From NCBI GenBank assembly GCA_038087875.1, contig CM075984.1, positions 44,950,001 to 45,014,000 of the forward strand: a DNA stretch of 64,000 nucleotides, written 5' to 3'. The notes beneath the pieces were generated by a model. The model was not told where the DNA came from, did not search any database, and was given only the letters and a program-made list of their open reading frames with translations. Shown here in pieces: positions 44,741 to 50,223 of this stretch; the stretch's first letter is position 1, and every line of letters begins with the position of its first letter. Source of the DNA: Malacoraja senta (Eukaryota). A program made the position numbers and the translations under genes.

Positions 44741-46406
44741 TCTGTCTTGCAAGGGATTTATAAAAAAGGAAGTATTGGGTGGATTTCACCTATACTTCCT
44801 GAAATTCAATCTGAGCATTCTCCTGGCGATCGAGTGTGCATGCAAAAATCACCAGCCGATTTTTTTCATTTAATTACACCTTGGAATTGACTTGAAATGT
44901 TTAGTAAACGACATGGGACGTTTGGTTTTCGTGTCGTTACGCACCCAGATGCACATAGAGTGACATTCGCGGTAATTTTTTCCAGAAAGCTAGATTTTAT
45001 TTAAGTCTCGTTTCTCGTTCTTAGTATATAATTTAATGCATGCCAAATATTTCGTCATTAAAGACAATTCGAATCACATCTGCACCGGATCACTTCCAAT
45101 TTTCAGATCTCGTTCAAGCGTAATTAACCAATCTTGGCCCAATTTAGATTTGACACCATGTTGAAATTAGTCGGGGTGTACGCTCATATATATTATATAT
45201 GATATTCCCCTCATCAGCGTATCATCACATTTCCCATTGTTTAGCAAATTCCATCAGCATAGTTGTCTGTTTAAAACAATAGTATCCGAAATAATAACGT
45301 CTAATATTAATTAATGTATATTATGTTAAATGTTACGACAATGGTCTGATTTGATTATTTGAAACATTCTTCATCTTCGAAAACAAGCTGAAAGATTACG
45401 GAAATGAAGACAGTTTGCAAATACTGCAACCTCAGTCGTTTAAGGAGTAGATTATAATTTAAAACAATATTATCTGGTCTTTGAAATCGACACTTAAAGT
45501 CGCGTTTTAATCCTCGAAATTACAGGAAGGTATTGGTAACATAATTGGATTGAATATATTTTCACCTGCTCCAAACGTACAGTTACGTGTTTGCAAATAT
45601 TATCCGCAATCTACGCGTGATTTCTGTATCATTTAATTTAACATAAATTTAGCAACAGTAAAGTGAAGTATCCAACGGGCGTGATCGGTTGATTTTCCTG
45701 ATGGCGTTGCCCCACTCACAATATGGTACTATCGCTCTGTGATAACCAATAGAAACGGTCTATACTGATAGTCTGTGCAACAATATTAAGGCTGATCCTC
45801 ACACAGCATTGCCTGCAAGTCAATGAAATTACAGTCAGATGGTAAGAGTTGAAAGACATTTGTTTATCTTTGCACACGCCGAAGCGGCAAACTATCTATC
45901 AACAGGTGCTGATAAGGATTGTCCTGGTTGCATTTCGATCTTTGATATCGCCGCCCTTTGCTAAACTCCGCTCAATTGTTTTAACACTTTGGCGTAAACT
46001 TTGCCACCTGAACAAGCTCAATAAAACTCACAGGGTGAAACAAAAGCAACACTTCCGTCCACTTTCCCTCACTCCGGGAAATACCAGAGCCGAAAAACAA
46101 AGCTAAGGGCACCTAGGCATTTTCAGCTGGAGGCAACTGTGTGTTCCTGGTCATTTTGATGAAACCACCAAGGGACACTGTGATTGCTTCCACCCCAGTG
46201 TTGGGCAAATGAACTTTCATTCTCAGTTACAGTCGTGTTTGATTCAAATCTGTACGAATTTGTCTTTCTGTGCAAAATATGTAACCAATACAAGCTTTCA
46301 GATTCTTTAATTAAAATCTATAAAATAATGAAGTAGTGACAGAAATATCAACACATTTTAATCACAAAACTATTTTACAACTGATTAATTAAGTGCCACC
46401 TCTTAC

Positions 46407-46541
46407 CCTTATCAGCCAAAATCCCGTCAATACTGTGCTTCGTTTTCTTATCGCCATCTTCATATTCTTTTCTTCCACAATCTTCCTCGTCGTCTTCTTT
46501 CTTTCCGAATTTGCTCCTCAGGATGCGGCTTATTGAACTCA
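46407..46541 (-). CDS. pax3: Pax-3 coding exon 4, end of paired domain plus octapeptide ([15 protein letters not shown]...[11 protein letters not shown])
   Basis: Lies in ORF 46375..46632. Acceptor caag|TG, donor AAG G|gtaaga. 135 nt, as in PAX3. ILRSKFGK is Pax3-type. Confidence 0.92.
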
Positions 46542-47056
46542 CTTGTTTGAAAGAAATGTTTTGAGACGATGAACAAAATGTTTCAAATTCCTGCGCGTTG
46601 TTCCGTTCGCGTAACAGAAGTCCGGAACACAAATATCAATCATTCATTTATAACTTCGGATCAAGCGGTTACATTTTACATTTGCGCATTAAAAATAATC
46701 AAATGGAAACATCTCTCTTGGGGAACGTTATATTCATGATCAACTCCATCGCGAAAAGCAGGTTCAAATTCCTGCAAGTACTGAATTTCCATTCCCGCAC
46801 TATAATACACGATCTGTACTCCTAATATTAGCACCGTGAAATGTTCCCTAACACATTTAATAATAATAAGTTAATGGACTGTCGAAGCAGTATTTTCGAA
46901 TTTGAGGCGCTGAAACGCCATAAGACACTGTTTCCTTTGGTATTAGTTGTGCAGCTGGGCGGTATTTACACTCGCAGCGAATTTCATGTTTAGACGAAAT
47001 AAGAGCAGCCATTATTATTTGGACTTTATTTCAATTCGCACAAATATTGTACCAAC

Positions 47057-47186
47057 CTGAGGGAATGGTATTTCGATCACACATGCCGTCTTTCAATAAC
47101 TTATCCCGGATTTCCCAGCTAAACATTCCAGGATTCTCCTTCTTGTATTCCTCGATCTTTTTTTCCACGTCTGGTATTGCCATTTG
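47057..47186 (-). CDS. pax3: Pax-3 coding exon 3, paired domain RED subdomain ([43 protein letters not shown])
   Basis: Lies in ORF 47031..47225. Acceptor gaag|CAA follows a polypyrimidine tract; donor TCA G|gttggt. 130 nt, the same as human PAX3 exon 3. Confidence 0.92.
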
Positions 47187-48805
47187 CTTCATTGGAAATG
47201 TTACCACAAGAGAGAAGATAAACAAAAAATATTTTTTTTCAGTTTTGCTACATTGCGACTCATAGCAGATGCATTCCGACTTTTACTAAATTTCTTATTA
47301 CCCCCGAAACAACAATTCCTTACACGAATCGGGGGGGGGGGGGGGAATCCTGTTGAATACATCATACAAAACAAAATAAAATATGATTTCTTAAAGTAAA
47401 GTTTAGAGTTGGAACTATATTTGCGTGTCCGATAACTCTGTCCAACTAAAGTATTATATATTACAATACATATACATTATATTATAATACATAATAATAT
47501 AAATGGGATACATAATACTTTATCAAGTATTAAATAACACTTTATATAATATATACAACTTTATTTGGACATAGTTATCGGAAACGCAAATATAGTTCCA
47601 AATCTAAACTTTACTATGAATTTGGCCTACAGTAAACGAAAATCAAACTGGGCACAAAAAAGTGTTTTATTGATTGATAACTTCACTGCGAGTCGCTACT
47701 TGAACTTTGCGGTCACGTTTATCGAAAATGCAGAGTCACCGGCGTACAATTCCTGTGTTTAATGACCTATATTACGATAATTGCGGGCCATTACAACCCG
47801 CGCGTTTAATTATCTGTGTCAAAACCACCGACATTAAAGATTGGATTACGAATCAAGGAATAATGTTGTCTCCATTACAAATATGGCATTTGCCACCCTG
47901 AATATCTGCGTTACAGTAAACCGCAGCATCGTCTGAAAAATTACCCCCCCCCCCATCCCATCTTTAGTTTTGCTGAAACCCATCAAAATTGTTCAACATT
48001 TCCTTTAATCTTATGTGTTTAAATATGCAGAATCGTACAACCCACGAAAAATATATATATTTTATTTCTGATTCTGTACAACGCAAATATTAAAAAGTCT
48101 TCAAGTGTTTAATATGGATAGTGCATGGAATATGGAAATTGAATCGATCATTAGCATTTTTAATAAACCGCATTTAATCACATTACCAAATTGAAACCTG
48201 TATTTGTTTTTGTTACTATATTTGTAATATTCTAATAATTAATCTAATATATAAATATCTTTACTCATTGGGTTATGATAACTAAAGAAATCCAAGGGTT
48301 ACAAGTACTTTCATTGCTGTTAGAAGTTTTATAATCTTAGCTTTTTGACTGCTGAAAGTTATTAACAATGCAACGATTAATCAAATCTATGCAACTTCTA
48401 ACATATCACCGGAACTAAAAAGCATTATCACAAAACACAATGTTGGCAAATGATCATGCTAAAAGTTTCGTTATTTTTTACGCCATGAATTCATAAACGA
48501 ATCTAAAATTGACTGCAGTGCCTCGATTATGACAGGCGTTGTGCATGTCTGCGTTGCCACAGATGGCAGATTCTGCAAACCCAGATGTTGATTTACAGTT
48601 TGGGGGAAATAAGTGCACGGTGTTACAATCCTCAGGTGGTTTTGGTCGATTTCACTGTCTGCTTTAGAGGAGCCTTCAGAGGCATGTACGGTTTCGCAGC
48701 GCCATCGGTGCACTTTGGAGATGAACCGTAACAACGCCTTTCATGACTGCGCATCAAGCAAGTTATAATGCAGAATATATGTATTTAATGAGTGGTCTCA
48801 CTTAC

Positions 48806-49038
48806 CCGGGGTTTGCTCCCAGTCGCCCCGGGTCTGATGGATCCTGTCTCCTGGTATCTGCAGAGGATTTTAGAGACACAACCGTGGGAGACCCTCAGCT
48901 GCCGGGAGATGACACACGGTCTGATACCGTGATGAGCCATTTCCACTATCTTGTGCCTGATATGATTTGGCAGAGGCCGGCCGTTTATAAAAACTCCTCC
49001 GAGCTGGTTCACTCTCCCTTGACCTAAAGGCGTTGACA
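48806..49038 (-). CDS. pax3: Pax-3 coding exon 2, paired domain PAI subdomain ([15 protein letters not shown]...[18 protein letters not shown])
   Basis: ORF 48785..49039 is an unmistakable Pax3/7 paired box. Acceptor aatag|TG, donor CGG|gtaagt. 233 nt. Confidence 0.93.
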
Positions 49039-49906
49039 CTATTTGCAGTAAAAATTCGCAGCGTCAATAAACATGTTGCAACTTAACCGATCACACAGAC
49101 AAGTGGAAATAAACTCTGAATATATTTCATCAACGTTTAAGTCAACAGAAGTGCTTATATATCGTGCCGAGTCCATTTGGAGAAATGATATTCAAGCAAA
49201 ACCATTCCTTGTTTCAGAATTAAAATTTATACATCTATTCAGGGGTGTCTCTTTCCGATGTTATTTTAACATGCACAATAAAAGTTAGAAGCAATGGTTC
49301 AGATTTATTGCAATAAAGCTTTGCCACTAGACTATTTAAATCTATGTTTTGTATCAATAGCTAATTTTTCCAGTCCCCCGTCCCAGTTGCTAAAAATTAA
49401 TATGATTTTGTGCATTTATATACTCTGATTCCGTAACTTGGGTTTACAGAAAAAAATGATTACATTACACAGATTACATTGACTACAAGCTGTAACACTG
49501 TTAAAACTAACTAAACCTCGTATATTTGAAACCAACCAAAAAGTATATTTGCTGCTATTAGATATCACAGTTTCTCTCCACCGACACTAACGCGACTCAG
49601 TCAGTATCAAACAGCAACGAACTATTCAACTATATTGGATTCTACTTACAGGATATACTGAACATGGTCGTCGTAGAAGGCGCGTTTATGGGCTCTAAGT
49701 AACTTTTTTTTTAAACAGGCATATATACTACATGGGCCTGCACGATCGCGGTCACATAAGAAGCATGACTGGGGGAAAAGTGTCATCAAGTATTGCCGTT
49801 GTCTCGCACAGAAGGTTCCCCGTGGTCCGCGCGTAAACGGCTTCTTTTCTGCTTCATGGTAGGGAGCTAAAGAAGCAGCGGATCAGTGAAAGCATGTGGG
49901 ACTCAC

Positions 49907-49994
49907 CTTCCAGTGGGAAGCCGCCGCTGCGAGGGTAATTCTGTCCTGGGGCAGGCCGCATCATTCTTGGGACGGGTCCAGCCAACGTGCTCAT
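49907..49994 (-). CDS. pax3: Paired box protein Pax-3, coding exon 1 ([29 protein letters not shown])
   Basis: Manual translation from ATG at 49994 matches the Pax3/7 N-terminus (human PAX3 [28 protein letters not shown]). Ends GAA G|gtgagt, a phase-1 donor. 88 nt. TLAG and PRSG favour Pax3. Confidence 0.9.
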
Positions 49995-50050
49995 ATTTTG
50001 GACACGTTCAGTCCCAGATTTTCAGTGGGTTAGCGAAGGAGGAGGAGAGA

Positions 50051-50076
50051 TTATATATATATATATATATATATAT
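50051..50076. repeat. (TA)n microsatellite in the putative 5' UTR
   Basis: About 12 TA units. Confidence 0.9.
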
Positions 50077-50178
50077 TTAAATTGAAAAAAGATAGTGACC
50101 ACTTTTAGATAAATCCACTCGGGCCAGTCGACTTCAGGGAAGCTAAAACGCAGCTTCGGTTTTGTTTTAGTTTTTTGT

Positions 50179-50223
50179 CCCCCCCCCCTACCCCCCACCC
50201 CCCCCCCCACCCCCCACCCCCCC
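50179..50223 (-). repeat. Poly-G tracts (mRNA sense) in the putative 5' UTR
   Basis: Five C-runs of 6 or more nt on the + strand, separated by 1-2 nt. Confidence 0.85.

What the first reader, a model, noticed from the sequence alone, without database searches (positions are those of the whole stretch)
48806..48835. One-codon deletion plus I>T in the near-invariant paired-domain linker (GAIGGSKP -> GATGSKP)
Seen: exon 2 ends CCC GGG GCG ACT GGG AGC AAA CCC CGG|gtaagt and is 233 nt, against 236 nt in human PAX3; the frame is preserved. Known: PG.IGGSKP is conserved across Pax proteins, and this linker contacts the DNA minor groove between PAI and RED. Inference: if real, this is a lineage-specific change in Pax3 DNA recognition. 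The rest of PAI is intact, so it does not look like a pseudogene.
Basis: partly seen in the sequence, partly recalled or inferred. Interest (0 to 1): 0.75.

Follow-up and report, generated by a model that had tools for sequence, protein, structure and literature searches.

The report
Elasmobranch Pax3 has a shortened linker
Every shark, ray and skate checked has a working Pax3 developmental gene whose normally unchanging DNA-gripping linker lost one glycine and changed three neighbouring residues in their common ancestor, which makes a natural experiment on how this protein family reads DNA.

Summary
Minus-strand exon 2 (49038-48806) is 233 nt and ends ...[11 protein letters not shown], one residue shorter than every other paired domain examined.

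It is not an assembly error. Independent contigs of the same organism match. A spliced 5.3-kb RNA contig from a related species has the same 233-nt exon. Diagnostic 31-mers across the junction occur in DNA runs of at least 8 organism labels.

It is also not skate-specific. All 23 elasmobranch Pax3 proteins fetched carry [13 protein letters not shown]: both shark superorders, and skates, stingrays, an electric ray and a sawfish. In contrast, 422 other paired domains are canonical, including skate, shark and chimaera Pax7.

The derived changes cluster in the linker: I101T, loss of G102, V109M and T111I. There are none in PAI or the homeodomain. dN/dS is 0.01-0.05. The Q+/Q- tandem acceptor is absent, so a fixed Q plus the lost Gly gives the ancestral 14-residue linker in a shifted register.

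In PAX6 mutational-scan data the equivalent single changes alter or abolish binding. Re-tuned DNA recognition is therefore plausible but untested.

No paper found mentions this. A sibling note on this window (s1-187666) raised the Q-length idea. The scan has not noted this on other DNA.

The parts
49907..49994 (-). Pax3 exon 1 coding part (ATG at 49994-49992; [29 protein letters not shown] + 1 nt), donor GAAG|gtgagt
   Evidence: Sequence; tblastn to Pax3/7; RNA joint 49907>49038
48806..49038 (-). Pax3 exon 2, 233 nt: PAI subdomain and first half of the linker
   Evidence: Pfam PAX 9.9e-43; RNA contig piece of 233 letters with 0 gaps; 233 nt also in shark and sawfish genomes
48815..48826 (-). 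The variant itself: GCG ACT GGG AGC = Ala-Thr-Gly-Ser where other Pax proteins have Ala/Val-Ile-Gly-Gly-Ser (human PAX3 I101T plus loss of G102 or G103)
47187..47192 (-). Intron 2 acceptor ...tgaag|CAA: a single AG with no NAGNAG, so Q108 is constitutive
   Evidence: Sequence; RNA joint 48806>47186; same aag|CAAATG in Chiloscyllium and Pristis
47057..47186 (-). Pax3 exon 3, 130 nt: second half of the linker (QMAIP at 47186-47172, carrying V109M and T111I) and RED helices
46407..46541 (-). Pax3 exon 4, 135 nt: end of RED, acidic region, octapeptide HSIDGIL

Best explanation
Shown: this is exon 2 of the single, functional Pax3 orthologue of a skate. Its short linker is an ancient fixed character of crown Elasmobranchii. 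In the elasmobranch stem the paired-domain linker was rebuilt by four changes: Ile101 to Thr, loss of one of the two invariant glycines, Val109 to Met and Thr111 to Ile. The PAI subdomain and the homeodomain stayed untouched and RED took only conservative changes. The tandem acceptor that gives other vertebrates Q+ and Q- Pax3 isoforms is absent, so Gln108 is always present. The lost Gly returns the Pro98-to-Pro112 linker to 14 residues, the length of Q- Pax3, PAX6 and Drosophila Prd, but with the Ser-Lys-Pro-Arg segment shifted one position toward PAI. Inferred: these residues lie in the minor groove between the two half-sites, so the rebuilt linker most likely changes which central bases, and which PAI-RED arrangement, Pax3 prefers. 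That would be a hard-wired setting in place of the splicing-controlled one-residue switch. After the rebuild the new linker was frozen by purifying selection.
For: Real and expressed: (three Leucoraja RNA runs encode it). Clade-wide: 23 of 23 elasmobranch Pax3 proteins from at least 15 species covering Galeomorphii, Squalomorphii and four batoid orders, while Pax7 of Leucoraja, Amblyraja, Heterodontus and Callorhinchus is canonical. Orthology: Pax3 clade SH-aLRT 99, elasmobranch clade 98. Clustering: 4 of 6 fixed derived paired-domain changes fall in 15 of 128 positions, binomial P = 0.002. Selection: dN/dS 0.012-0.046 over exons 1-3, and in the 16 linker codons 2-6 synonymous and 0 non-synonymous differences per pair. 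No NAGNAG in skate, shark or sawfish. Contact role: PAX6 Gly72 contacts a base and the linker latches into the minor groove. PAX6 scan: I71 is 'the most striking position' for target-specific effects. Scores against nonsense at about -1.8, LE9/BLX: I71T +1.10/-0.34, V78M -2.01/-1.39, T80I -1.44/-0.10, G72A +0.14/-2.00, G73A -0.68/-2.10. In the same source data I71, G72, G73 and V78 fall in the 3 A DNA-distance bin. A one-residue Q+/Q- difference changes mouse Pax3 affinity for sites that use both subdomains.
Against: No binding or in vivo data exist for any elasmobranch Pax3. The PAX6 scan is from a paralogue without the Gln insertion and tests single substitutions, not the combination or a deletion. 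Because net linker length equals the ancestral 14, the set of changes could be mutually compensating and leave specificity unchanged. Elasmobranch proteins evolve slowly, so identity of the linker among species is weaker evidence than the species count suggests. The state in chimaeras is unknown, so the timing and the order of the four changes are not resolved.
Confidence: 0.55

Rival explanations
1. Compensated, functionally neutral drift. The Q- splice form was lost (or Q became fixed), making the linker one residue too long. Loss of a glycine restored the ancestral length, and the other substitutions re-fitted the shifted register. DNA specificity and affinity end up the same as in canonical Pax3.
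For: Linker length Pro98-Pro112 is 14, as in Q- Pax3, PAX6 and Prd. The NAGNAG is absent in three elasmobranch genomes. The PAI recognition surface is unchanged. Pax3 expression and gene structure look ordinary.
Against: The register of Ser-Lys-Pro-Arg relative to both subdomains differs from any other Pax protein. In PAX6 the equivalent single changes are far from neutral. Ile71 is a known specificity-tuning position. A full return to identical function through four changes at DNA-contacting positions would be a coincidence.
Confidence: 0.33
2. Relaxed constraint. Elasmobranch Pax3 binds mainly through PAI and the homeodomain, the linker and RED matter less, and the linker decayed.
For: All derived changes lie in the linker and RED, none in PAI or the homeodomain. 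Pax7 with a canonical linker is retained in the same genomes and could cover RED-dependent targets.
Against: The derived linker is identical in 22 of 23 proteins across the whole crown group (Narcine differs only at the variable position 110). It shows 0 non-synonymous against 2-6 synonymous differences per pair. RED has only conservative changes (R123K, V148I). Decay would not stop after four changes.
Confidence: 0.07
3. Assembly or consensus error at the G runs, or a change private to this skate, or a pseudogene or extra paralogue.
For: The site is flanked by G and C runs.
Against: Independent contigs, RNA contigs from two skate species, junction 31-mers in at least 8 organism labels, and two other genome assemblies all agree. 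The tree places the gene as the only elasmobranch Pax3. The ORF is intact with low dN/dS.
Confidence: 0.01

Closest known systems
Pax3 and Pax7 Q+/Q- isoforms of mouse, human and zebrafish (NAGNAG acceptor of exon 3; Vogan et al. 1996 as summarised in PMC5852603, and PMC10415112)
   Same: A one-residue change of length in the same linker, a few residues away. The elasmobranch linker has the length of the Q- form.
   Different: Here the change is genomic, fixed and constitutive. It removes a Gly of the invariant GG rather than the Gln. The Gln is always present and the tandem acceptor is absent. Three more linker residues changed with it.
PAX6 linker variants at Ile71, Gly72, Gly73, Ser74, Val78 and Thr80 in the paired-domain deep mutational scan (PMC11219921)
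   Same: Homologous positions. Ile71 substitutions, including I71T, shift preference between two DNA elements, and the Gly, Val78 and Thr80 substitutions reduce binding.
   Different: These are laboratory single substitutions in a paralogue lacking the Gln. No deletion or combination was tested. They are not natural fixed states.
Canonical Pax3 of bony vertebrates and Pax7 of cartilaginous fishes
   Same: Same gene family, exon structure and splice phases, an identical PAI subdomain, the octapeptide, and (in orthologues) the homeodomain.
   Different: They have PGAIGGSKP[KR]QV[TA]TP, whereas elasmobranch Pax3 has [14 protein letters not shown].
Pax7 GL+/GL- isoforms (PMC10415112)
   Same: A precedent that one or two residues inside the paired domain change what the factor does on chromatin without abolishing DNA binding in vitro.
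   Different: Different site (start of RED helix 6), produced by splicing, and in Pax7.

Membership tests
Paired-box (PAX) DNA-binding domain, Pfam PF00292 | Significant match to the PAX profile | tested here: met
   Exon 2 alone scores 145.5 bits against a cut-off of 22, E = 9.9e-43, profile positions 1-74
Paired-box (PAX) DNA-binding domain, Pfam PF00292 | PAI subdomain with the family's conserved DNA-contact residues | tested here: met
   Residues 34-97 are identical to other vertebrate Pax3/7, with no elasmobranch-derived change
Paired-box (PAX) DNA-binding domain, Pfam PF00292 | Canonical linker P-x-x-[IV]-G-G-[ST]-K-P of fixed length | tested here: not met
   PGATGSKP is one residue short, with Thr for Ile. 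422 other domains are canonical, and the 23 short ones are all elasmobranch Pax3
Paired-box (PAX) DNA-binding domain, Pfam PF00292 | RED subdomain present | tested here: met
   Exons 3-4 align to RED of Pax3/7 with only R123K, V148I and position 142 differing
Pax3 orthology group (as opposed to Pax7 or another paralogue) | Groups with Pax3 of bony vertebrates in a gene tree | tested here: met
   Pax3 clade SH-aLRT 99, elasmobranch Pax3 98. The window's protein is 99% identical to Leucoraja Pax3
Pax3 orthology group (as opposed to Pax7 or another paralogue) | Octapeptide and paired-type homeodomain downstream | tested here: inconclusive
   The octapeptide HSIDGIL is in exon 4. No homeobox exon lies in window 1-46406. 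The 99%-identical Leucoraja protein and the cluster representative carry PF00046
Pax3 orthology group (as opposed to Pax7 or another paralogue) | Q+/Q- tandem (NAGNAG) acceptor at exon 3, as in mouse, human and zebrafish | tested here: not met
   The acceptor is aag|CAAATG in the window, Chiloscyllium and Pristis. All 23 proteins and the RNA contig are Q+
Functional gene (not a pseudogene) | Open frame, consensus splice sites, spliced transcript, purifying selection | tested here: met
   GT..AG at all three introns with RNA joints, Leucoraja mRNA contigs from three runs, dN/dS 0.012-0.046

The most novel reading that the evidence does not exclude
Elasmobranch Pax3 recognises a different composite paired site than every other Pax3, with changed central bases or half-site register. 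In that reading its target enhancers have co-evolved with it since the origin of crown elasmobranchs, and a hard-wired linker replaced the splicing-controlled Q+/Q- switch of other jawed vertebrates.
Probability: 0.3. Interest if true: 0.75.

Novelty: new variant of a known kind. Interest (0 to 1): 0.55.

Why it matters
The Gly-Gly-Ser-Lys-Pro linker is among the most invariant stretches of the paired domain, and single changes at these positions damage or redirect PAX6 binding. A whole vertebrate subclass has lived with a rebuilt Pax3 linker since its common ancestor and keeps it under strong selection.

This gives a ready-made natural variant for asking three things: what the linker contributes to site choice, how far its length and register matter (the Q+/Q- question), and whether a master regulator's DNA-reading surface can change together with its targets. 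It also matters in practice. Motif models and antibodies from mammals, and variant-effect predictors trained on conservation, should not be carried over to shark and skate Pax3 without checking.

Tried and rejected
Hypotheses rejected:
- Assembly error was rejected.
- A skate-private change was rejected once shark and ray proteins were fetched.
- A pseudogene or extra paralogue was rejected.

Searches that gave nothing useful:
- The exon-2 fragment search and the search of representatives clustered at 50% identity found no short-linker protein. This is because elasmobranch sequences sit inside clusters with long representatives. These searches were useful only as a census of canonical linkers.
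- Chimaera Pax3 could not be found. It is not among the best 120 of either full-length search nor among the 15 listed members of the 88-member cluster.

Limits of the read data:
- Read laying tables were truncated, so the two base differences in organism D's exon 2 and the exact state in organisms C and E could not be read directly. The junction 31-mer query was used instead. C and E were not listed as holders there, which the tool says is not evidence of absence.

Papers and supplements:
- Xu et al. 1999 (PMC316729) and Vogan et al. 1996 (PMC231670) are not held. Their content is cited only through papers that summarise them.
- The first supplement search for 'I71T' failed because the files use three-letter codes (solved).

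Not run:
- Structure prediction was not run. Without DNA the linker is unstructured, and an alignment dominated by canonical sequences would not discriminate.

Full report
**Observation.** The gene lies on the minus strand. The reverse complement of 48835-48806 reads AGA CCC GGG GCG ACT GGG AGC AAA CCC CGG followed by gtaagt. The exon starts after aaatag at 49038, so it is 233 nt and translates to [11 protein letters not shown]...[15 protein letters not shown]. It matches Pfam PAX at E = 9.9e-43. Against the four solved paired domains (Prd 1PDN, Pax5 1K78, Pax8 2K27, Pax6 6PAX) HMMER places a one-residue gap exactly here and pairs the Thr with their Ile. Exon 1 (ATG 49994, donor at 49907), exon 3 (47186-47057) and exon 4 (46541-46407) complete the paired domain and octapeptide. 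No homeobox exon lies in the remaining 46 kb of the window.

**Is it an artefact?** No.
- Logan contigs of the same organism (run X1) are identical across the exon.
- Run X15 of a related organism D (about 4% diverged in introns) holds a 5,349-nt contig at depth 170. It joins 49907>49038, 48806>47186 and 47057>46541, all GT..AG, and its exon 2 piece is 233 letters with no gap.
- I then queried a 60-base stretch (48791-48850) in which every 31-mer spans the junction. All sampled words are held in full by DNA runs labelled as organisms A, B, D, F, G, H, I and J and by two unlabelled samples.
- Three RNA runs of Leucoraja erinacea each assemble an mRNA encoding the same linker.

**How unusual is it?** In the fragment search 103 of 103 readable linkers were the full PG[VAI][IV]GG[ST]KP. 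Of those, 422 carry x-x-G-G-[STA]-[KR], 23 carry PGATGSKP, and 4 are truncated or garbled models. The 23 are all elasmobranch Pax3.

**Whose character is it?** A full-length search with a turtle Pax3 brought in catshark and zebra-shark Pax3, and both have [18 protein letters not shown]. The cluster members with names cover:
- Galeomorph sharks: Scyliorhinus canicula and S. torazame, Mustelus, Chiloscyllium, Hemiscyllium, Rhincodon, Stegostoma.
- A squalomorph shark: Heptranchias.
- Batoids: the skates Leucoraja and Amblyraja, the stingrays Mobula, Hypanus and Hemitrygon, the electric ray Narcine and the sawfish Pristis.

All have the short linker, and only Narcine differs, at the variable position 110. 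Pax7 of Leucoraja, Amblyraja, Heterodontus and the chimaera Callorhinchus is canonical.

A maximum-likelihood tree puts the elasmobranch genes with bony-vertebrate Pax3 (SH-aLRT 99) as one clade (98). The window's protein sits next to Leucoraja at 99% identity, which agrees with the scan's notes that this genome is a skate. Genomic loci of Chiloscyllium punctatum and Pristis pectinata show exon 2 of 233 nt with the same boundaries and the codons ACT GGG AGC. The change is therefore a shared derived character of crown Elasmobranchii. By general knowledge that crown group is some hundreds of millions of years old; its age was not computed here. Chimaera Pax3 could not be retrieved, so whether the change is older is open.

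**Anatomy of the change.** I compared 13 elasmobranch Pax3, 16 bony-vertebrate Pax3, 11 Pax7 and an outgroup column by column. In human PAX3 numbering, the changes fixed in elasmobranch Pax3 and absent elsewhere in the paired domain are:
- I101T, loss of G102, V109M and T111I in the linker.
- R123K and V148I in RED.

Position 142 is variable everywhere. There are none in PAI (34-97) and none in the homeodomain. K107R and T110A are retained ancestral, Pax7-like states. Four of six changes fall in 15 of 128 positions, binomial P = 0.002.

The exon 3 acceptor is aag|CAAATG in skate, shark and sawfish, so there is no NAGNAG and the Gln is constitutive. Counting from Pro98 to Pro112, the linker has 15 residues in Q+ Pax3 and 14 in Q- Pax3, PAX6 and Prd. 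It has 14 in elasmobranch Pax3, but there Ser-Lys-Pro-Arg sits one position nearer PAI and Gln follows it. A sibling first-reader note on this window (s1-187666) had proposed this length equivalence. The acceptor and the count were checked here.

**Selection.** Over exons 1-3 (150 codons) pairwise dN/dS among the window, Leucoraja, Chiloscyllium and Pristis is 0.012-0.046, with dS up to 0.33. In the 16 linker codons there are 2-6 synonymous and 0 non-synonymous differences per pair. The rebuilt linker is conserved, not decaying.

**Likely mechanism.** The following points come from the literature.
- The linker latches into the minor groove between the PAI and RED half-sites, and PAX6 Gly72, the first Gly of the pair, contacts a base.
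- In the PAX6 deep mutational scan (PMC11219921), linker and PAI DNA-facing residues are the most sensitive, and Ile71 is called the most striking position for target-specific effects.
- From that paper's source data, with nonsense at about -1.8, the LE9 and BLX scores are:

| Variant | LE9 | BLX |
|---|---|---|
| I71T | +1.10 | -0.34 |
| V78M | -2.01 | -1.39 |
| T80I | -1.44 | -0.10 |
| G72A | +0.14 | -2.00 |
| G73A | -0.68 | -2.10 |

- I71, G72, G73 and V78 fall in the 3 A DNA-distance bin.
- In mouse, the one-residue Q+/Q- difference changes Pax3 affinity and activity on sites that use both subdomains. Two residues in Pax7 RED change its chromatin-opening activity.

From this I infer that the elasmobranch linker re-tunes minor-groove reading and PAI-RED coupling, fixing one setting where other vertebrates alternate two. 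This is inference. No binding data exist, the scan is in a paralogue without the Gln, and it tests only single substitutions.

**Rivals.** Neutral compensation is the serious alternative (about one in three): the Gly loss restores the length after the Gln became fixed, and the other residues re-fit. Relaxed constraint on the linker and RED fits the location of the changes but not their later conservation. Artefact, a private change, a pseudogene and an extra paralogue are excluded.

**Known or new?** The proteins are in public RefSeq annotation. I found no paper in the held library that mentions the altered linker; one phylogenetic study used the Scyliorhinus torazame sequence without comment. 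I class it as a new variant of a known kind: a bona fide Pax3 paired domain that fails one family hallmark, the fixed-length GG linker.

Noticed in passing
window 49920-49925 (minus strand, exon 1): Elasmobranch Pax3 has one extra residue before the paired domain (RSGGFPLE or RSSGFPLE against RSGFPLE). It is present in all elasmobranch rows that cover it and absent from all bony-vertebrate Pax3 and all Pax7 (column 24). This is a second clade-wide indel in the same gene.
   Followed up: partly
window 50179-50223 and 50051-50076 (minus strand, upstream of the ATG at 49994): There is a 45-nt almost pure G run about 190-230 nt upstream of the start codon and a (TA)n run about 60-80 nt upstream. 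Contigs of all runs break in this area (one search reports reads cut at 50041-50100). This could be a G-quadruplex-prone 5' UTR or promoter element.
   Followed up: no
window 1-46406: Intron 4 exceeds 46 kb, and no homeobox exon is found by tblastn. Orthologous genes span 85 kb (Chiloscyllium, Pristis) to 105-114 kb (Leucoraja, Mobula, Scyliorhinus).
   Followed up: partly
window 46375-46406 (read-through of the exon 4 donor): The annotated short Pax3 isoforms of Leucoraja and Amblyraja (199 aa) end ...ADKGNAV. They do not end with the intron-4 read-through GKRWHL... that another first-reader note (s1-187667) compared with human PAX3A. The annotated short form therefore uses another exon.
   Followed up: partly
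run X15 laid on window 46300-50100: The tool labels this run 'RNA? (probably DNA)'. It nevertheless holds a spliced 5.3-kb Pax3 contig at depth 170, plus intron pieces at depth 2-4. That pattern fits RNA with some pre-mRNA or genomic carry-over.
   Followed up: no
P0379 and P0381 (Mustelus asterias): Two RefSeq Pax3 entries with different names on one contig differ only at residues 196-199 (DPVA against ATAS). This looks like alternative junction use just after the octapeptide.
   Followed up: no
same genome, another piece (note s1-210410): An unchecked first-reader note says the Pax8 paired domain of this genome has lost two basic linker-region residues. If true, linker change in this lineage may not be limited to Pax3.
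   Followed up: no
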